DNA of 64,000 bases from contig NC_043011.1 in assembly GCF_006345805.1 (NCBI RefSeq), forward strand, positions 7,564,001 to 7,628,000. Direction: 5' to 3'. The DNA comes from Octopus sinensis. Taxonomy: Eukaryota. The notes under the pieces are model-generated. The model worked only from the letters and a program-made list of their open reading frames with translations, was not told the DNA's origin and made no database searches. A program made the translations under genes and the position numbers. Of this stretch, positions 5,016-57,429 are shown piece by piece (positions within the stretch are counted from its first letter, which is position 1; each line of letters begins with the position of its first letter).

Positions 5016-5680
5016 TATATATAACATGCCACATATTGCTAGGATTTCAGGCTTTGTTCATAATGTTATATTTTCAAAATACCAGGACGCTGAACTATGA
5101 GAAAACATGACAAAAGAAAACAAATAAAAATCAGAAAAAAAACAAAGCAAGGAGAAAGATGCGAAGAAGGTTGAGACAAAAAGTGGAACAAATAGAAGGA
5201 AAAGAATAGAAAACCAAAATAATCGTTGCTTTGACAGAAGGGACCATAATTAATGAGGCTGGTGCGGACGAATAGAACAGAAAGGTGACTAAAGTCTATG
5301 AGATGGCTACGCAATCCAGAATGGGTGGGATCTTCCAGTTCGAGGAAAGTGCGTTCTGTAAAAACTCTACGGCCTTGTGTGCCTGCGAGGCACAGAAGGA
5401 GCAGCGTTGCAAGATATGAAGGACGGCAATACTGTCTGAAGATTGAAAGAGAGAAGCAAAAGAATTAAATGCAGAGAGAAACCTCTTTGTTGAGCTTCGT
5501 TAGAAAGCTCCTCACTCGTGGAGGCCGTAAAGGAATTGTGAAAAACTGTCGAAAAAGCTCTGACTTTGCTTTCAGTCATTGGGTTAAGGGTTATATACTA
5601 GGAAAACCGCATTGAAAGGGGTCGGGTTAGTCGATTAAATCAACTCCAGTACTTACGTTTTGTTTTGAAATTTGGTATTT

Positions 5681-5765
5681 ATTCCGAGTTCGATTCCAGG
5701 CAGTGACCCGAATAATAAAAATAGTAATAATAATAATAATAAAAATAATAATAATAATGATAATT

Positions 5766-5817
<52 letters not shown>

Positions 5818-5858
5818 TGATAATTATAATGATAATGATAATAATGATGATGATAATA

Positions 5859-5899
<41 letters not shown>

Positions 5900-6052
5900 A
5901 ACATCGAAAAATACCTTAGGAATGAGAACCCAGGTTCGAAATTTCTCCAAGACACCTGATGAAAGCTGGAGGGTATATCAGCCGAAATGTTGTGTTAACA
6001 ACAAACAAGATGAGGACAAATATCCATCAAATGTATATAATGTAAATAATGT
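5681..6052 (+). mobile_element. SINE family E (5'-truncated tRNA-like head, (AAT/GAT)n spacer, hammerhead-like tail)
   Basis: B-box gagttcgattcc plus aggcagtgac matches the head at 43565-43640. The 150-bp tail matches 46622-46777. Confidence 0.7.
5951..5996 (+). ncRNA. Minimal type I hammerhead-ribozyme-like motif
   Basis: GACAC-CTGATGA-A-AGCTG-loop-CAGCC-GAAA-TG-TT-GTGTT. Stems I and II pair by eye; activity is untested. Confidence 0.5.
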
Positions 6053-6265
6053 TTTAACGGTTTGTTTTACCAAACCATTATATGATGAGGATCTAAGCAA
6101 ACCAACGCTACTTATCAAGTGGTGATGGTGGGGTGTGACAAACGTAGACACAAAAGCACACGCACACACATACATACATACACACATACGTACATACATA
6201 CATACATACATACATACATACATACATGAATTACATAAACATATATAGGTAGTATGTATATATAT

Positions 6266-8120: not shown

Positions 8121-8229
8121 AACCGGTTAAAGTTGGTAGACGGACAAATCGTTGACAGACAGTTGGCCGTCAGAGAACTTTCAGATACTTCATGATCAAT
8201 ACTTCCGCATGTCGACTTATTATTCAATC

Positions 8230-8715
8230 AGCCAATTGCCCCATCAGCGAATTGTCTGTCGGCGGACTGTCTGTCGATGAATTGTCTTTCGGCGAATTGT
8301 CTGTCGACGAATTGTCTGTCGGCGAATTGTCTGTCGCCGACTTGTCTGTAGGCAAATTGCTCAATCTGCGAATTGTCTTTCGGCGAATTGTCTGTCGACG
8401 AATTGTCTGTCGGCGAATTGTCTGTCGCCGACTTGTCTGTAGGCAAATTGCCCAATCTGCGAATTGTCTTTCGGCGAATTGTCTGTCGATGAATTGTCTG
8501 TCGGCGAATTGTCTGTAGCCGACTTGTCTGTAGGCAAATTGCCCAATCTGCGAATTGTCTTTCGGCGAATTGTCTGTCGATGAATTGTCTGTCGGCGAAT
8601 TGTCTGTAGCCGACTTGTCTGTAGGCAAATTGCCCAATCTGCGAATTGTCTTTCGGCGAATTGTCTGTAGGAAAATTGCCCAATCTGCAAATTGTCTTTT
8701 GGCGAATTGTCTGCA
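8230..8715. repeat. Higher-order minisatellite: 91-bp unit made of five 15-mers (gaattgtctgtcggc) plus a 16-mer
   Basis: Units start at 8279, 8370, 8461, 8552 and 8643, an exact 91-bp spacing. Confidence 0.95.
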
Positions 8716-8841
8716 CACGTTAAGGTCAAACAACTGATAAGCAAATCTGTGGTATTGAGCAAAATATTTGCTGGAGCTCGTCTTTTATACCAAGACAAAA
8801 CATGTACATGATAGCACTTCCATGAGAGCCACTACCTGGTA

Positions 8842-43012: not shown

Positions 43013-43564
43013 TATTTATATATATTAATATATAATATATATATATAATATATATTATATATATATATATAAATATATAATAACAAATGATATATATAGA
43101 TATATTCCAAATTAACTTCATGCATTAACAATATTGGGTCTGCAACAAGCGGGGTTGGGGTGGGGGTGGGGGTGGTGTTGGTAGTGGGGACCGGGTTAAT
43201 GGGCGCTGGGGTGCCAGGGTTGGGGGTGAAATGGATTGATTGACAGAATGACCAGAGCAGGACATTCAAAATGGTGGATATTCTTTCAGTGTTTAGTAAG
43301 TCCCTTTATTTATTTATTTATTTTTTCTAGGAGTTCAGATTCTGTCATGTTCGATTTTGCGTTCGAATCTCTCCGAGGACAATAAGAATTTAGGAAAAGA
43401 AAAGAAAAGAAAAGAAACCTCAATGTCTGTAGAAGGGTAACAGCACAAGAAATGCTGAAGCAAAACGTAAATAAATACAAAAGAAAGAACATAACGAACC
43501 GACAGGGATTCAGTTCTGTATTTAAGAGATGAGGAATTTTGTACGTTATTTACATTATGCTCAC

Positions 43565-43640
43565 GGGCATATGGCGTAGTGGTTAAGAGCGCGGGCTACT
43601 AACGCCAAGATTGCGAGTTCGACTCCAGGCAGTGACTTGA
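43565..43640 (+). mobile_element. SINE family E tRNA-like head
   Basis: A-box tggcgtagtgg, anticodon-like loop ctactaa and B-box gagttcgactcc, followed by (AAT)n. Confidence 0.8.
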
Positions 43641-43663
43641 ATAATAATAATAATAATAATAAT

Positions 43664-45890
43664 ATAGTTTTTTAACAGACAGCAGCATATTCCCTAATGA
43701 ACAGAAAGGATGTAAACGTGGATCCTACGGCTGTAAAGACCAACTACTCATCAATAAGATGATCTTAGAAGATTGTCACAACACGACACACAAACTTATC
43801 AATAGCCTGGATAGACTATAAAAAGGCTTTTGATAGCCTACCACATAGCTGGATTAGGAAATACCTTGAAATGTATAAGATAGCACCAACTCTGCGAAAC
43901 TCTTGACTGTAAGTATGAGATCATGGAGAACCACACTAACTCTGAACAGTGACAGTGAATCCTAAATGCTGGTGATGTAAAAATTTCGTGTGGCATTTTC
44001 CAGGGTGACTCACTGTCACCACTCCTCTTTTGTTTATCCTTAATACTCTCTCAAAGCTGCTCAATGACGCGCAGTACGGGTATAAAATGTTTGATAAAAA
44101 TATAAATCATCTCGTTTACATGGATGATTTAAAGCTTTTTGCAAAAAATGATCAACAACTCAAGGGCTTACTAGCGATAGTCAAACAATTCAGTGACGAC
44201 ATCAGAATGCAATTCGGCCTCGATAAATGTGCAAAGGCTACCTTTATCAAAGGAAAAATGACAGAAACATCTAACGTTAACCTTGACCAACAGAATGTCA
44301 TAAAAGAACTAGACCCAGCGGAGAGCTACAAGTACCTAGGGTAATGAATGAAGGGAACGGAATAAGGCATTCAGAGATGAAGGAAAGGATCAGGAGAAAA
44401 TGCTATCGAAGAGTGAGAGCAATACTCAAGACAGAGCTGAATGCAAGAAACAGGATCGAAGCAATCAATGCATTAGCTATACCAGTCGTGACTTACAGTT
44501 TCAATATTGTTAACTGGTCAATTACTGAAATATGTCAGCTCGACAGAAAAATAAGGAAACTGTTGACAATGCATAGAATGCACCACCCTAAGGCAGATAC
44601 AGAACGACTCTATCTGCCAAGAAAAGAGGGAGGCCGTGGTCTTTTGCAACTGGCAATAACAATGAAGATTGCTACAATTGGCCTAGACACCTACCTGAAA
44701 AACTCTGAGGATTGGATGTTAAAAATTGTCTCAAAACATGAAAACAAGAAAGCATCATACTCAGTCACAAAACAGGCAAAGGAATATCTAAGTGAATTCC
44801 GAATACAACCAATTTCGGAATTAGAGATAGACATACAAGAAACAAGCACAGAAAAAGCTAGGCGCATGAAAACCCGTGCCAAAACTGCGGCCTTAGATAT
44901 TCTGAATAATAAATGGCAAGAAAAACCTCTCTATGGCAAATACCCAAGAGAGCGAATAATGCAGATATCGACAAAGCCCTGACCCATCAATGGCTAATGG
45001 CCTCTGGCTTAAAATCTGAAACAGAGGGGTTATCATAGCAGCTCAAGATCAATGCCTACCAACAAGAAACTACCAGGCCAACATATTAAAGATCAGAAGC
45101 AGTCCACGTGTCGTGTATGCAAGCAACAAAATGAAACCATTGACCATGTGGTCTCCAAGTGCAGTCTTCTAGCGCCTACAGAGTATCTCAACAGGCACGA
45201 TAGAGCTGCACAATATATTCACTGGGTAATCTGTAAAAACCTGGATTTGCCCCATGAAAAAAACTGGTGGGAACACAAACCACCCCAGTGCTTGAAAATG
45301 ACCACATCTCACTCCTCTGGAACTTCACCATTCAAACTGACAGGAAGATAGATGCAAATAGGCCAGACATCATATTGAAAGACTTCAAACAAAGAACATG
45401 CCTCCTCATTGATATGACTGTCCCAATCGATATAAACGTATCTGTCAGGACCTACCAAAAACTGAGCAAATATAAAGATCTTGAAATAGAAATCAGCAAA
45501 ATGTGGAAGCTGAAGACTAAAACAATACCTGTTGCCATAGGTGCCCTGGGAATGATAGCAAAAGGGGCTGATAGCTACCTAACTCAAATACCAGGAAACC
45601 CAAAAATGGCAGAAGTTCAAAAGATAGTGCTCATGGGAACTGCTCATATCCTACGCAAAAATACTCTCTATGTAACCTCAAGGTTTAAACAACCATAATT
45701 TTCGGTTAAAAAAAAAAAAAAAAAAAAACTTTTTTTTTTAGACATTCATTAGTACAAACATCCCCACCCCCCAAATATATGGCACACTAGGCATAACAAC
45801 AACATGAACTTCCAACCCTGTTGTCTCTTGAGGTCTCTGGGTGAGACTTGGAGCCAACTTGTACAAATTAAAGCAAAAGTCAAACATAGA
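43664..45890 (+). mobile_element. 5'-truncated R4/Dong-like non-LTR retrotransposon (RT, CCHC and restriction-like endonuclease), frameshifted
   Basis: Motifs QKGC, KAFDS, QGDSLSP, YMDD, YKYLG, RLYLPRKEGGRGL, CRVC-x8-H-x4-C and RPDI..LIDMTVP..K. (AAT)n flanks both sides. Confidence 0.92.
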
Positions 45891-45922
45891 ATAATAATAA
45901 TAATAATAATGATAAAATAATG

Positions 45923-45994
<72 letters not shown>

Positions 45995-46243
45995 AACTTG
46001 CACAAAGTAGTATGTAGCGGTTTTTAAATCAAAGCGGACATCTCCTGTCAAGAGTCCCAGATGAACCTACCTCACGGCAAGAGGTGCAAATGAGAGTAGC
46101 TATATCAAACTCCATTCTTCACCAGTGCCACATATTAGACGAGGTTCTTCGTAATAATAGTGTAGCACAAAACGGCGGTGCAACAGCATGGCCGCAGCTC
46201 TGAGCTGAAACTAGAAAAAAAAAATTATTATTATTATTATTAT

Positions 46244-46476
46244 TTAGGGACCTTTTGAGCGGGATGGGCTACTCGACCAGAAGAAAATTCTAACTGGGCC
46301 CCACTGGCAAGGTCATGTGCTGTTTATCTTGATATGAGGTCACCATGTCGCGCACATATGGTTGTGATGCATGTGTCTAGTGCACCCTTATCAGACGGGT
46401 AGTCATGATGGGGATACTGAGCTTCGTATATTTTACCCCAGTGTCACTTTGATGACATGCACTGCTCTCTCACTCA
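46244..46476 (+). mobile_element. Retro-element family F 3' part with (AAT)n tail
   Basis: Matches 7728-7960 in the opposite orientation. Confidence 0.7.
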
Positions 46477-46511
46477 ATAATAATAATATAATAATAATAA
46501 TAATAATAATA

Positions 46512-46596
<85 letters not shown>

Positions 46597-46621
46597 TAAT
46601 AATAATAATAATAACAACAAC

Positions 46622-46777
46622 AACATCAAAAAATACCTTAGGAATGAGAACCAAAGTTTGAAATTTCCCCAAGACACCTGAAGAAGGCTGGAGGGTATAC
46701 CAGCCGAAGCCTTGTGTTGACAACAAATAAGATGAGGACAAATATCCGTCAAATGTAAATAATGTAAATAATGTACT
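46622..46777 (+). mobile_element. SINE family E tail with hammerhead-like motif (46673-46718)
   Basis: Matches 5900-6052. GACAC-CTGAAGA-A-GGCTG..CAGCC-GAAG-CC-TT-GTGTT. Confidence 0.8.
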
Positions 46778-47234
46778 ACAGGGATTCGTTTTGATCCTTT
46801 ATATATTGTGTTTAAATCCTGGCGTAGTCGTTTTTGCACCTTATTCCTCCGAGGTTTACAAAAGAGAATACCAGTCAAACACTCGGGTTTATTTACAATG
46901 TTTTTATAAGTCCTCCCACAAAATATGTAGCATTATACATGCATCAAAAGCCCTTATTCTTTCCAGTTAATTATGGAACCTCTGTGTGTTAGCGCGGCGT
47001 GCTAGAAATAAGAGTCAAATCTCCCGCATATGACATCTCTTCGTCTAACAAAAGTCAAATTGGATAACGTCAGCTACAGGTTTCCAGAATATAGAAAAAT
47101 AGGTATGGTCCCTGCTGGACTAATTTTGACCATAGATCTGATGGATCAGAGTAAAGGACAGCGACAACCACCTCCCCCAGGCGGCCCTTGTGGCAAAAAT
47201 TTGAATTATTATAATAATAATAATAATAATAATA

Positions 47235-47515: not shown

Positions 47516-47529
47516 TTAATAATAATAAT

Positions 47530-48000
47530 ATTATTATTATTTTATGTTTCACTTTTGCTTTACATTTGTACAAGTTGGCTCCAAGACTCACATAGAGACC
47601 TCAAGAGACAGCAAATTATAAGTTCATGTTGGTGTTATGCCTATGGTGCCATATATTTGGTTTTGTACTTAGTGTTGTACTAGTGAATATCTAAAAAACA
47701 ATAAGAAAATTGTTTGTTTTGAAACTTGAAATTACAAAGAAAGTATATTGCGTAGGATATGAGCAGTTCCCATGAGTACTATCTTTTGAATTTATGCCAT
47801 TTTGGGGTTTCCTGGTATCTGAGCTAAGTAGCAATCAGCCCCTTTTGCTATCATTCCCAGGCACCTATGACAACAGGCATTGTTTTAGTCTTCAGGTTCC
47901 ACATTTTGCTAATTTCTATTTCAAGATCTTTATATTTGCTCAGTTTTTGGTAGGTCTTGACAGATACGTTTATATCGATTGGGACAGTCATATCAATGAA
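47530..48000 (-). mobile_element. R4/Dong-like 3' fragment (endonuclease C-terminus plus 3' UTR)
   Basis: Reverse-complement match to 45405-45890, flanked by (ATT)n/(AAT)n. Confidence 0.88.
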
Positions 48001-48121: not shown

Positions 48122-48965
48122 TCTCTGTCAGTCGGGCAATACAGTAGGTGGAAGTACCATTTTGGCGGTCTATAAAGGATCAGTGATGAACAAATGCGAC
48201 GATGTTCTCAGGAAGTCTCAGGGCGTATGCAGGAATCAACTGGCTGGTCTATCCCGGAGAACTTTCGGACCGGGGACCATGGATAATTTCCAGAAATCCT
48301 TGGCTTGGTAGTACTAGCGGTTTGGAATTACCGGTTCGGGCAAAACTCTACAGACATGGAACTGTCATCGGGCTTGACCGAGACGCGGACAGAGCGACGA
48401 AACTGTCCTGCACGATGTCATCCACTTCCCCCCAGGTATTGCTGAATTGTGGGTTTATGTTGAACACTGCTGTCATGTGTAGGACAAACCCACAATTCAG
48501 CAATACCTGGGGGGAAGTGGATGGCATCGTGCAGGACAGTTTCGTCGCTCTGTCCGCGTCTCGGTCAAGTCCGATGACAGTTCCATGTCTGTAGAGTTTT
48601 GCCCGAACCGGTAATTCCAAACCGCTAGTACTACCAAGCCAAGGATTTCTGGAAATTATCCATGGTCCCCGGCCCGAAAGTCCTCCGGGATAGACCAGCC
48701 AGCTGAGACCATTGTAAAGATCGTCTTGCCTCCTTCCTTTGGCCTGGAAGGACATGTAGTGTTTATTTGTCTGGTAACTTTAGCGAAAACGATTGTGTGG
48801 TGGACTAGATCGAAAAGACTGAAGACACACTTTCCACTTTGGCCAATCTCACATCAACTTATGCAAATTTCACTTGAAAAGAGAGAATAAAGAAGGAACG
48901 CTTCCTGCCAGCAATTTTGCTGGAAGATGGGTGAATGTAGCAAGAATGCTACATGTAGGTGAATG
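48122..48965 (+). mobile_element. Older Tx1-like LINE fragment containing a 221-bp inverted duplication
   Basis: Homologous to 35890-36540. Arms are at 48236-48456 and 48486-48706. Confidence 0.8.
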
Positions 48966-54545: not shown

Positions 54546-54671
54546 AATGCCGAAACGATAGTGTTCGATGATGCTTGGTTAAAACAGCGCTGCTTCAGGT
54601 CGCCCGTCCTCTCTCCCTTATTTTCCTCTCCATCCTTATTCGCCTCTCTGTCTTCACCTCGCCAAGTTTTT

Positions 54672-54930
54672 ATCGTGGGGCAAATCCAGGTTTTTGCAAA
54701 TTATCCAGTGAAAATACTGTGCTGCTCTATCATGCCTGTTGAGATACTCTGCAGGCGCAAGAAAACTGCACGTGGAGACAACATGATCAATGGTTTCATT
54801 TTGTTGTTGACATAAACGACATGTTAGGCTACTGCCGTTCTTTAATATGTTGGCTTCGTAGTTTCTTGTAGGTAGTCTTTGATCTTGGGCTGTTATGATA
54901 AACCCCTGTGTTTCTGATTTTAAACCAGAA
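54672..54930 (-). mobile_element. R4/Dong-like fragment (CCHC region)
   Basis: Reverse-complement match to 45000-45255. Confidence 0.8.
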
Positions 54931-55510
54931 AATACTAACCTCTACTCTTACCCCACACCCACATTGCACTACGAAAGTAACAATTGATTAGCAGTCATTA
55001 TTAGGGCCCATGCACCTGCTTGTCACACCTCTATTGAGCTGGTTCATTTACAATGATACAAGCCCCCTGGTGGGTCTGTAGCACATTATATCTGCTCATC
55101 TTCCATCTTCAAGGCTAGGAAGACACTACTGTCTACGTTTCCCCACCCGATGGAAATTACATCTCACCTATCATCGCCCAGGACTTCCTTCAATCCCTCT
55201 CTTGAAATAACACATCAGAAAACACCCAACCCAACTCTTTTTGCGTAGCAAAGACATATCCCATTTCTACACTTGGACAAACTCCTCGAGCAAGTAAACA
55301 CTGGTCTTTGGGATACACTTTTTATCTCATTTTATTCTCTTATTGAAGCTTCATCATCGGGAATGATAACTATAATGCTGTAATTATACTAAACTATGCG
55401 TTGTTGCTGTTGTGGTTGTTGTAGTTCTGGCTCATCAAGTTTTCAAAATGATTGTCCGTATTATTATTATTATTATTATTATTGCTAATTACTACAACTA
55501 CTACTACTAC

Positions 55511-55572
<62 letters not shown>

Positions 55573-55586
55573 GCTACTTACTACTA

Positions 55587-55866
55587 CTTATTCTTTGTAA
55601 GCCTAGTATTTATTCTATCGATCTCTTATGCCGAACACACCAGCATCGGTTGTCAAGCGATGTTGGGGGGACAAACACAGACACACACACACACACATAC
55701 ATACGACGGGATTCTTTCAGTTTCCGTCTACTGAATCCACTCACAAGGCTTTGGTCGGCCCGAGGCTATAGTAGAAGACACATGCCCAAGGTGCCACGCA
55801 GTGGGACTGAACCCAGAACCATGTGGTTGGTAAACAAGCTACTTACCACACAGCCACCCCTGCGCC
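55587..55866 (-). mobile_element. SINE family A following (CTA)n
   Basis: Partial tail, (CA)n tract and full head. Confidence 0.88.
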
Positions 55867-55884
55867 TAAGAAACCATATGAAAA

Positions 55885-56289
55885 TTATGTGTTTGTTTTA
55901 AAATTTGAGAATACATAGACAGTATTTTACGTAGGATATGGGCAGTTCCCATAAGTTCTAACTTTTGAATTTCTGCCATTTTGGGGTTTCATGGTATCTG
56001 ATCTAGGTAGCAATCAGCCCCTTTTGCTATCATTCCTAGGGCATCTATGACAACAGGTATTGTTTTAGTCTTCAGGCTCCACATTTTGCTAATTTCTATT
56101 TCAAGATCTTTATACTTGCTCAGTTTTTGGTAGGTCTTGACAGATACATTTATATCGATTGGGACAGTCATATGATTTTTGTCTGAAGTCTTTTGCCAGT
56201 TTGAATGGTGAAGTACCAGAGGAGTGAGATGTGATCATTTTGAAGCACCGGCGGTGGTTTGTGTTCCCACCAGTAGGTCCAGGTTTTTG
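55885..56289 (-). mobile_element. R4/Dong-like endonuclease fragment with internal deletion
   Basis: ORF 55989-56171 (MTVPIDINVSVKTYQKLSKYKDLE) matches 45416-45600. Confidence 0.85.
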
Positions 56290-56357
<68 letters not shown>

Positions 56358-56360
56358 TTA

Positions 56361-56650
56361 CAACTGGCAATAACAATGAAGATTGCTTACAATTGGCCTA
56401 GACACCTACCTGAAAAAGTCTGAGGACTGGATGTTATAACTTGTCTCAAAACATGAAAACAAGAAAGCATCATACTCAGTAACAAAACAGGCAAAGGAAT
56501 ATCTAAGTGAATTCCGAATACAACAAATTTCGGAATTAGAGATAGACATACAAGAAACAAGCACAGAAAAAGCTAAGCGCATGAAAATCCGTGCTAAATC
56601 TGCGGCCTTAGATATTCTTGTACAAGTGTAAAGCAAAAGTCAAACATAGA
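56361..56650 (+). mobile_element. Internally deleted R4/Dong-like copy
   Basis: Sequence equivalent to 44648-44900 is joined directly to the terminal ttgtacaa..caaacataga. It lies between (AAT)n and (AAC)/(AAT). Confidence 0.85.
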
Positions 56651-57429
56651 ACAACAACAACAACAATAATAATGATAATTAATAGAATGTAAAATATTGG
56701 TTTCGTATTTTGGCACAAGGCCAGCAGTTTCGGGTGATGGGCTAAGTCGATTAAGTCCCCAAGGTGCCACGCAGTGGGATTGAACCCGGAACCATGTGGT
56801 TGGGAAGCATGCTTCTTACCACAGAGCCACGCCTGCACCTAGTGTGTATTCCTGTAATGTCATATCGTTTGGACTGGTACTTATTTTATCGACCCTGAAA
56901 GGAGGAAATGAAAGTCGACCATGGCAGAATTTGAACTCAGAACGTAAAGACGGACGAAATGCCGCATTTTGCCCATCGTGCCAACGATTCTGACAATTTG
57001 CCGAAATATTCTGCAAATTGACTGAAATCAAAATACAGAACGTGGCAGCAAAACCCTCCAAGACTTGAAATGGTCATTGGTGTGGCACTAATAAAGTTTG
57101 GCAGATCGTTATTAGTTTATTCTTTTACCTACTTCAGTCAACTGACTGCAACCATGCTGGAGCACCGCCTTTTAGTAGAACAAATCGACAGTGTAAGCCT
57201 CGTACTTATTCTGTCGGTCTCTTTTACCAAATCGCCAAGTTGCAGGGACGTAATTTATATATATATAGGCGTAGGATTGGCTGTGTGGTAAGTAGCTTGC
57301 TTACGAACCACATGGTTCCAGGTTCAGTCCCACTGCGTGGCACCTTGGGTAAAGTGTCTTCTACTTCAGGCTCGGGCCGACCAAAGCCTTGTGAGTGGAT
57401 TTGGTAGACGGAAACTTTGTTCACCATCC

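What the first reader, a model, noticed from the sequence alone, without database searches (positions are those of the whole stretch)
43502..46787. SINE E opened up by nested insertions, with a 10-bp TSD and twin-priming geometry
Seen: ACAGGGATTC at 43502-43511 and 46778-46787 brackets, in order, an inverted piece (43512-43556, whose last 16 nt match the E tail end 46761-46776 at 15/16), the E head (43565), (AAT)n, an R4/Dong-like LINE, a SINE-A-like piece, family F, (AAT/GAT)n and the E tail. Established: a short terminal piece in one orientation plus the rest inverted, within one TSD, is the signature of twin priming in target-primed reverse transcription. Inference: head and hammerhead-like tail are one mobile unit inserted by TPRT, and its internal (AAT)n later attracted three more insertions.
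Basis: partly seen in the sequence, partly recalled or inferred. Interest (0 to 1): 0.7.

Follow-up and report, generated by a model that had tools for sequence, protein, structure and literature searches.

The report
Nested SINE with inverted tail patch
A short retroposon (SINE) in a repeat-rich animal genome was later split by three other retroposons; its 10-base target duplication is real, and a 53-base patch at its front carries a backwards copy of its own tail tip, which suggests both DNA strands primed copying, but it is one example of a known kind of event.

Summary
The core observation holds. ACAGGGATTC occurs only at 43502-43511 and 46778-46787. It brackets a tRNA-like head (43565), (AAT)n, nested retroposons and a 157-nt tail. 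A second copy at 5683-6052 (truncated head, (AAT/GAT)n, tail 90% identical) shows that head, repeat and tail are one unit. The inverted match is real: 43541-43558 is the reverse complement of the tail tip 46759-46776 at 17/18, and it is the best non-self match to that tip in the window.

Some details are wrong.
- The "SINE-A-like piece" is the 3' UTR of the LINE.
- "Family F" is two units, F and G.
- No hammerhead is detectable.
- The 29 nt next to the left repeat (43512-43540) are absent from both direct tail ends, so they are not part of the usual E unit.

The order is not classical twin priming, because the inverted piece lies 3' of a full-length direct copy, not 5' of it. My best reading is one TPRT event in which the top strand also primed on a 3'-extended E-related RNA. 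The LINE is R2-group and Dong-like; both of its 3'-complete copies here sit inside (AAT)n.

No further E copy or empty site could be retrieved. Interest is low.

The parts
43502..43511 (+). Left copy of the 10-bp target-site duplication ACAGGGATTC
   Evidence: chance test.
43512..43540 (-). 29 nt ('X'). On the minus strand it reads AAAATTCCTCATCTCTTAAATACAGAACT and continues directly from the inverted tail tip. It is not present at either direct E 3' end.
   Evidence: Unique in the window at up to 3 mismatches. Its last 13 nt resemble the E terminus at 10/13. It is 9-nt complementary to AGATGAGGA in the tail.
43541..43558 (-). Inverted copy of the E tail tip, 17/18 to 46759-46776
43559..43564 (.). 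6 nt of filler (GCTCAC) between the inverted piece and the head
   Evidence: Read; no match found.
43565..43639 (+). E head, tRNA-like, with A box at 43572-82 and B box at 43616-26
   Evidence: Its 3' part recurs at 5681-5707. It resembles other tRNA-type SINE heads in the window. No tRNA call by ARAGORN or Rfam.
43640..43664 (+). Left remnant of E's internal (AAT)n
43665..45890 (+). 5'-truncated R2-group, Dong-like LINE. The RT starts at about 43665. CCHC lies at 45109-45162 and the RPD..D motif at 45360-45413. The stop codon is at 45696-98. The 3' UTR runs to 45890, includes an A21 expansion at 45708-28, and ends in (AAT)n.
   Evidence: RVT_1 E=5e-17 and zf-RVT E=9.5e-6, just under its cutoff. 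The only PDB hits are R2 proteins, E=4.7e-10. The 3' UTR is contiguous in copy 47999-47523(-).
45891..45990 (+). (AAT)n between the LINE and F
45991..46226 (+). Retroposon F. It ends in A10, and its 3' 60 nt are shared with another SINE family.
46240..46475 (+). Retroposon G. It is 83% identical to 7964-7724(-), and both copies end in (AAT)n.
46476..46620 (+). (AAT)n(GAT)n(AAT)n(AAC)n, the right remnant of E's internal repeat
   Evidence: The same repeat types occur in copy 2 at 5708-5899.
46621..46777 (+). E tail, ending in (TGTAAATAA)2TGTACT
   Evidence: 90% identical to 5900-6052.
46778..46787 (+). Right copy of the target-site duplication ACAGGGATTC
5683..6052 (+). Second, 5'-truncated E copy: 27 nt of head, (AAT/GAT)n and the tail. 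A possible 12-bp TSD, ACG[T/G]TTTGTTTT, lies at 5655-66 and 6057-68.

Best explanation
E is a tRNA-headed SINE built as head, (AAT/GAT)n, then a 157-nt tail ending in TGTAA-type repeats. The copy at 43512-46777 went in by one target-primed reverse transcription event at a 10-bp staggered break, which gave the duplication ACAGGGATTC.

The bottom strand primed at the normal tail end (...AATAATGTACT) and produced a full-length copy. The top-strand 3' end (...GGGATTC) also primed reverse transcription, 29 nt further 3', on an E-related RNA carrying a 3' extension. That extension could be a read-through trailer of the source copy, or a longer tail variant. This second cDNA ran 47 nt (43512-43558), 18 of them into the tail tip, and then stopped. 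It was joined to the head end through 6 nt of filler. That is why a backwards tail tip sits in front of the head.

The patch is a scar of integration, not a heritable part of E. It lies upstream of where a box-A-directed Pol III start would fall.

Later, a Dong-like LINE that targets (TAA)n, and two short retroposons F and G, landed in E's internal (AAT)n.

Shown: the duplication, the inverted match, the unity of head and tail, the LINE type, and the (AAT)n flanks of the LINE copies. Inferred: priming by both strands, the RNA origin of the 29 nt, and the order of events.
For: - The 10-mer occurs only at the two borders. Chance with the same positional freedom is 0.35-0.8%.
- The inverted 17/18 match is the top non-E hit to the tail in the whole window and lies inside the 53-nt gap. 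It is absent from 13 other repeat copies.
- An antisense copy attached to the top-strand side of the duplication needs a sense-strand template, which is the defining step of twin priming (PMC12016303).
- Copy 2 shows the unit head-SSR-tail, 5' truncation and the same 3' end.
- There is no TTTT in the E sense strand or in the 29 nt, and TTTT follows within 12 nt of both copies. A Pol III transcript would therefore carry a trailer.
- Both cDNAs start AGT(A/T)C, and the two RNA priming sites share 10/13 nt.
- Another SINE in the window keeps a 16-bp duplication, so duplications survive here.
- LINE: RVT_1, R2-only PDB hits, and two copies flanked by (AAT)n on both sides. Dong is known to sit in TAA repeats (PMC3774820).
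Against: - There is only one instance, and only two E copies from which to define the E ends.
- The source of the 29 nt is unknown and unique in the window.
- The order of the two cDNAs on the RNA is the reverse of classical twin priming. Twin priming is very rare for short elements: 0.02% of germline Alu (PMC12016303).
- No empty site could be examined.
- The flanks are old, AT-rich repeat debris, which raises the background of short matches.
Confidence: 0.5

Rival explanations
1. The 29 nt are the true 3' end of the E consensus. The insertion is twin priming on one E RNA, and the direct copy is merely short at its 3' end.
For: - The 29 nt end in TAAATACAGAACT, which is 10/13 to the direct terminus TAAATAATGTACT.
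- They contain the exact complement of AGATGAGGA in the tail. This gives a 9-bp stem around the terminal repeats, of the kind seen in LINE/SINE 3' recognition hairpins (1.3-1.7% by chance).
Against: - Both direct E copies stop at ...AATAATGT(AC) and go on into unrelated flank.
- The 29 nt occur nowhere else in the window.
- TPRT does not normally give 3'-truncated copies.
- Both hints were found post hoc.
Confidence: 0.15
2. The duplication is real, but the 53-nt patch is filler picked up while the 5' junction was repaired. It came from end joining or template switching onto stray nucleic acid, with no reverse transcription primed by the top strand.
For: - Extra nucleotides at 5' junctions are common in LINE and SINE insertions (general knowledge).
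- Copy 2 may also carry about 15 extra nt between its candidate duplication and its truncated head.
- 6 nt (43559-43564) are unexplained filler.
Against: - The patch contains an exact-register inverted copy of the element's own terminus, continued without a break by the 29 nt. Random filler does not predict this.
- The local right junction cannot be the template, because it reads ...GTACT-ACAGGG, not GTAC-AAAATT.
Confidence: 0.15
3. Coincidence. The 10-mer pair and the inverted 18-mer are chance matches in AT-rich repeat debris, and the true duplication of E has decayed.
For: - The window is packed with simple repeats and old SINEs.
- The BLAST E-value of the inverted hit alone is 0.18 window-wide.
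- No alternative evidence such as an empty site is available.
Against: - The two position-restricted signals each have p of about 0.001-0.008, and they fall together.
- No better duplication abuts 43565 and 46777.
Confidence: 0.1
4. 43512-43564 is the regular 5' leader of full-length E. E would then have imperfect inverted termini, AGTnCnnTATTTA at both ends.
For: - The termini match at 10/15 in inverted orientation (0.2% of random 15-mers).
- There is only one 5'-complete copy to judge from.
Against: - The leader would lie 50-60 nt upstream of box A. That is outside a Pol III type-2 transcript, so it could not be inherited by retroposition (established knowledge).
- Other tRNA-type SINE heads in the window show nothing similar upstream.
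- Copy 2 is 5'-truncated, as retroposons are.
Confidence: 0.07

Closest known systems
Twin priming / 5' inversion of L1, and rarely Alu (Ostertag and Kazazian 2001; described in PMC12016303)
   Same: Two oppositely oriented cDNA segments lie inside one target-site duplication. The non-inverted segment carries the 3' end. The two segments share an overlap of about 18 nt, close to the reported overlap range (median 12 bp, quartiles 4-17).
   Different: In L1 the inverted cDNA is primed internally and covers sequence 5' of a truncated direct segment. Here the direct segment is full-length. The inverted one starts 29 nt 3' of it, on sequence not found in the element's other copies, and is only 47 nt long.
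tRNA-derived SINEs with LINE-type tails ending in short repeats, such as the L2-partner SINEs with TGTAA repeats (from memory: UnaSINE1/UnaL2, Kajikawa and Okada 2002)
   Same: A tRNA-like head with A and B boxes, no poly(A), a tail ending in TGTAA-containing repeats, 5' truncation, and 10-12 bp duplications.
   Different: A long internal (AAT/GAT)n separates head and tail. No partner LINE with this tail is present in the window, so the partnership is untested.
Dong / R4-clade (R2-group, restriction-like endonuclease) LINEs that insert in (TAA)n
   Same: The RT is followed by CCHC and an RPD..D motif. The nearest solved structures are R2 proteins. Both 3'-complete copies in the window are embedded in (AAT)n and end in (AAT)n. 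Dong is flanked by TAA repeats (PMC3774820).
   Different: The copy is 5'-truncated and frameshifted. No phylogeny was made, so placement within the R4 clade specifically is not shown.
Hammerhead-bearing SINE-like repeats and retrozymes (from memory: Schistosoma Sm-alpha, metazoan retrozymes)
   Same: The tail contains CTGA(T/A)GA ... GAA(A/G) around a 5-6 bp GC-rich hairpin.
   Different: No Rfam hammerhead model matches either copy, even at E<=10. An extra A sits between the core and helix II. No U follows the candidate helix III. The fold is no better than shuffled sequence.

Membership tests
Classical twin priming (L1-type 5' inversion) | One target-site duplication flanks both the inverted and the direct segment | tested here: met
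   ACAGGGATTC at 43502-11 and 46778-87 only; chance 0.35-0.8%.
Classical twin priming (L1-type 5' inversion) | The direct segment carries the element's 3' end, abutting the duplication | tested here: met
   Homology to copy 2's tail runs to 46774, 3 nt before the right 10-mer, and the tail is taken to end at 46777.
Classical twin priming (L1-type 5' inversion) | The inverted segment is element sequence lying 5' of the direct segment (internal priming) | tested here: not met
   The direct segment starts at the head's first base, 43565. The inverted segment is the last 18 nt of the tail plus 29 nt beyond it. Definition from PMC12016303.
tRNA-derived SINE | A tRNA-related head with internal Pol III A and B boxes | tested here: inconclusive
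   The boxes are visible at 43572-82 and 43616-26, 44 nt apart. There is similarity to other tRNA-type SINE heads. ARAGORN and the Rfam tRNA model give no hit.
tRNA-derived SINE | Retroposition hallmarks: flanking duplication, and 5'-truncated copies sharing the 3' end | tested here: met
tRNA-derived SINE | The tail is shared with a partner LINE's 3' end | not testable with these tools
   No LINE with this tail is in the window. No other sequence of the species was reachable.
Hammerhead ribozyme | Conserved core with three helices, as scored by Rfam covariance models | tested here: not met
   No hammerhead family at the gathering threshold, or at E<=10 in 43400-46900 and 5600-6120. MFE z-score is -0.3.
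R2-group / Dong-like LINE | A reverse transcriptase closest to R2-type RTs | tested here: met
   RVT_1 E=5e-17. PDB hits are only to R2 proteins, 9nl3_A E=4.7e-10, with none to L1 ORF2p.
R2-group / Dong-like LINE | A C-terminal CCHC zinc knuckle plus a restriction-like endonuclease motif | tested here: inconclusive
   C-x2-C-x8-H-x4-C at 45109-62 and RPD-x14-D at 45360-413 were read by eye. zf-RVT scores E=9.5e-6, just under its cutoff. The C-terminal part has no PDB hit.
R2-group / Dong-like LINE | Insertion into (TAA)n microsatellites | tested here: met
   Copies 43665-45890 and 47999-47523(-) are flanked by (AAT)n on both sides. Dong's upstream flank is TAA repeats (PMC3774820).
R2-group / Dong-like LINE | Phylogenetic placement within the R4 clade | not tested
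   No reference R4/Dong sequences were available. The best database relatives are unnamed, at 57-75% identity.

The most novel reading that the evidence does not exclude
The patch may record a 'reverse-order' twin priming. First-strand synthesis began at an internal recognition motif (TAAATAnnGnACT) of a SINE RNA that still carried a 3' extension. The second target strand primed at a second copy of that motif at the extension's end. The extension pairs with the tail, giving a 9-bp stem around the terminal repeats.

If this recurs genome-wide, it would reveal the RNA 3' structure that the partner reverse transcriptase recognises. It would also show that both nicked strands can start reverse transcription at defined RNA sites.
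Probability: 0.15. Interest if true: 0.45.

Novelty: new member of a known kind. Interest (0 to 1): 0.2.

Why it matters
Mostly as annotation. It fixes the borders of one SINE insertion. It shows that head, microsatellite and tail form a single element. It identifies a (TAA)n-targeting, Dong-like LINE that explains why microsatellite-bearing SINEs become nests. The inverted tail-tip patch is a rare scar that could say something about how this SINE's partner reverse transcriptase starts, but only if more examples and the source of the 29 nt are found in the whole genome.

Tried and rejected
1. External copies or an empty site.
- Exact-protein look-ups of ORFs spanning the tail plus right flank, and the left flank, found nothing on record.
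- A protein search with the tail's open frame found no candidates.
- Exact-pattern scans of metagenome, genome and viral collections gave only chance 19-mer hits in unrelated bacterial-type sequence, or none.
- LINE protein relatives are at most 57-75% identical. One fetched locus (L006) shares none of the window's SINEs.

2. Paralogous empty site. The right flank 46807-46889 is an old copy of the window's abundant SINE (E=4e-7). The left flank carries the same portion of that SINE, not the adjoining one, so the flanks cannot be joined through a repeat consensus.

3. Longer duplication. Direct similarity beyond the 10-mer, or between the left flank and the E tail, is not significant.

4. Hammerhead: rejected.

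5. DNA-transposon reading (10-bp duplication plus imperfect inverted termini, 10/15). Set aside because copy 2 is 5'-truncated with the same 3' end, and the head has Pol III boxes.

6. Local snap-back copying of the right junction as the source of the patch. Rejected because that junction reads GTACT-ACAGGG, not GTAC-AAAATT.

7. The species was not identified.
Full report
**What is there**

The window is AT-rich (38% GC) animal DNA, dense in microsatellites and SINEs. ACAGGGATTC occurs exactly twice, at 43502-43511 and 46778-46787. Between the two copies lie, in order:
- a 53-nt stretch (43512-43564);
- a tRNA-like head starting at 43565, with A box at 43572-82 and B box at 43616-26;
- (AAT)n;
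- a 2.2-kb LINE fragment;
- (AAT)n;
- two short repeats;
- a long (AAT)n(GAT)n(AAT)n(AAC)n;
- a 157-nt tail ending ...AAATGTAAATAATGTAAATAATGTACT at 46777.

**Head and tail are one element**

A second copy at 5683-6052 has the last 27 nt of the head, about 190 nt of (AAT/GAT)n, and the tail at 90% identity. So head, microsatellite and tail form a heritable unit. Copy 2 is a 5'-truncated copy with the same 3' end, which is the pattern of retroposition. Copy 2 stops at ...AAATAATGT and runs into unrelated sequence. A possible 12-bp duplication, ACG[T/G]TTTGTTTT, lies at 5655-66 and 6057-68.

**Is the bracket more than chance?**
- I drew random position pairs from this window and allowed the same freedom: right copy starting 0-5 nt after the 3' end, left copy anywhere within 110 nt upstream of the 5' end. 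A 10-mer repeat turns up in 0.35% of pairs if simple repeats are excluded, and 0.8% if they are not.
- Scanning the tail against the whole window on both strands, this is the best hit after the true E copies. Of 6380 53-nt windows, only those covering this site reach its score.
- Thirteen other repeat copies in the window show nothing like it.
- One of those copies, a SINE at 33887-34172(-), keeps a 16-bp duplication, so duplications of this size survive here.

I take both features as real and linked.

**The 53-nt patch**

Read on the minus strand, the patch is GTGAGC-ATAATGTAAATAACGTAC-AAAATTCCTCATCTCTTAAATACAGAACT. That is 6 nt of filler, then the tail tip, then 29 nt (X) that abut the left 10-mer.
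- X is unique in the window at up to 3 mismatches.
- X is absent from both direct tail ends.

Two weak, post hoc signals suggest that X is nevertheless related to E:
- Its last 13 nt match the direct terminus at 10/13, so the cDNAs next to both 10-mers begin AGT(A/T)C (0.2% of random 15-mers do as well).
- It contains the exact complement of AGATGAGGA in the tail. If tail and X were one RNA, this would give a 9-bp stem around the terminal repeats (1.3-1.7% by chance).

**Mechanism**

An antisense copy attached to the top-strand side of the duplication needs a sense-strand template. That is, the top-strand 3' end was extended on RNA, which is the essential step of twin priming (PMC12016303).

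In the classical case, however, the inverted cDNA is primed internally and covers sequence 5' of a truncated direct segment. Here the direct segment is full-length, and the inverted one starts 29 nt 3' of it and overlaps it by 18 nt. I therefore propose a variant:
- The template RNA carried a 3' extension.
- The bottom strand primed at the usual tail end.
- The top strand primed at the end of the extension and copied 47 nt.
- That cDNA stopped just inside the region already engaged by the first cDNA.

A trailer is plausible. Neither E nor X contains TTTT in the sense strand, and both genomic copies are followed by TTTT within 12 nt, so Pol III transcripts would run into the flank. Whether X is such a trailer, or part of a longer tail variant or partner LINE, cannot be decided here.

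The patch lies upstream of any box-A-directed start, so it should not be inherited (established knowledge of type-2 Pol III promoters).

**Rivals**

The rivals are: X as the true E end; random filler; coincidence; and a regular 5' leader. Each is listed in the rival explanations with its evidence.

**The nest**

- **LINE (43665-45890).** It has an RT (RVT_1, E=5e-17). Its only relatives among solved structures are R2 proteins (E=4.7e-10). The RT is followed by a CCHC knuckle and an RPD-x14-D motif, read by eye.
- **LINE 3' UTR.** It runs through 45734-45895 to (AAT)n. A second copy at 47999-47523(-) has the same UTR directly after the coding end, without the A21 run.
- **Target preference.** Both LINE copies have (AAT)n on both sides. 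This fits the TAA-repeat context of Dong in the R4 lineage (PMC3774820).
- **F (45991-46226).** It shares its 3' 60 nt with another SINE family and ends in A10.
- **G (46240-46475).** It recurs at 7964-7724(-), and both copies end in (AAT)n.

**Hammerhead**

CTGA(T/A)GA and GAA(A/G) flank a 5-6 bp hairpin. Against a hammerhead:
- No Rfam hammerhead model reports either copy, even at E<=10 in searches of a few hundred to a few thousand bases.
- The core spacing is off by one A, and no U follows the candidate helix III.
- The tail folds no better than shuffles.

**Limits**

No other sequence of this species could be reached. The E consensus therefore rests on two copies, and the empty site is untested. 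The flanks are old SINE debris and do not give a paralogous empty site.

**Verdict**

This is an ordinary nested retroposon cluster with a genuine 10-bp duplication and one unusual integration scar. The twin-priming label holds only in the broad sense that both strands primed. The hammerhead label does not hold, and neither does the claim that the E consensus continues beyond its tail end.

Noticed in passing
window 48236-48706: A near-perfect palindrome with two arms of about 220 bp. ORFs on opposite strands (48202-48594 +, 48348-48755 -) encode almost the same LINE-like C-terminal peptide.
   Followed up: partly
window 33874-34192: A copy of the abundant SINE at 33887-34172(-) is flanked by a perfect 16-bp direct repeat (reverse complement of ATCACTCTTAAGGCGG) at 33874-89 and 34177-92. 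This is a clean target-site duplication.
   Followed up: partly
window 47523-47999 (-): A second 5'-truncated copy of the Dong-like LINE, flanked by (AAT)n on both sides, lies 750 bp downstream of the studied locus in the opposite orientation. Rearranged pieces of a third copy lie at 54665-56678.
   Followed up: partly
window 45708-45739: The A21-C-T10 run inside the LINE 3' UTR is absent from the other LINE copy. It looks like a local expansion or a small insertion, not a poly(A) tail marking an element end.
   Followed up: partly
window 5655-5682 and 6053-6068: E copy 2 has a possible 12-bp duplication (11/12), with about 15 extra nt between it and the truncated head. Extra 5' nucleotides may therefore be common for this family.
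   Followed up: partly
window 15401-15500: A run of 100 N, an assembly gap.
   Followed up: no
window 17035-18843 (-): A cluster of transposon-like ORFs, none of them checked: a mariner-type N-terminal peptide (17035-17424), a C2H2-rich ORF (17666-18097), and an RT C-terminal fragment of a different LINE (18253-18843).
   Followed up: no
window 8224-8798 (-): Overlapping ORFs over a tandem repeat that encodes repeated ...DNSPTDNSSTDNSPKDNS... / ...RQFADRQF... peptides. It looks like a minisatellite, not a gene.
   Followed up: no
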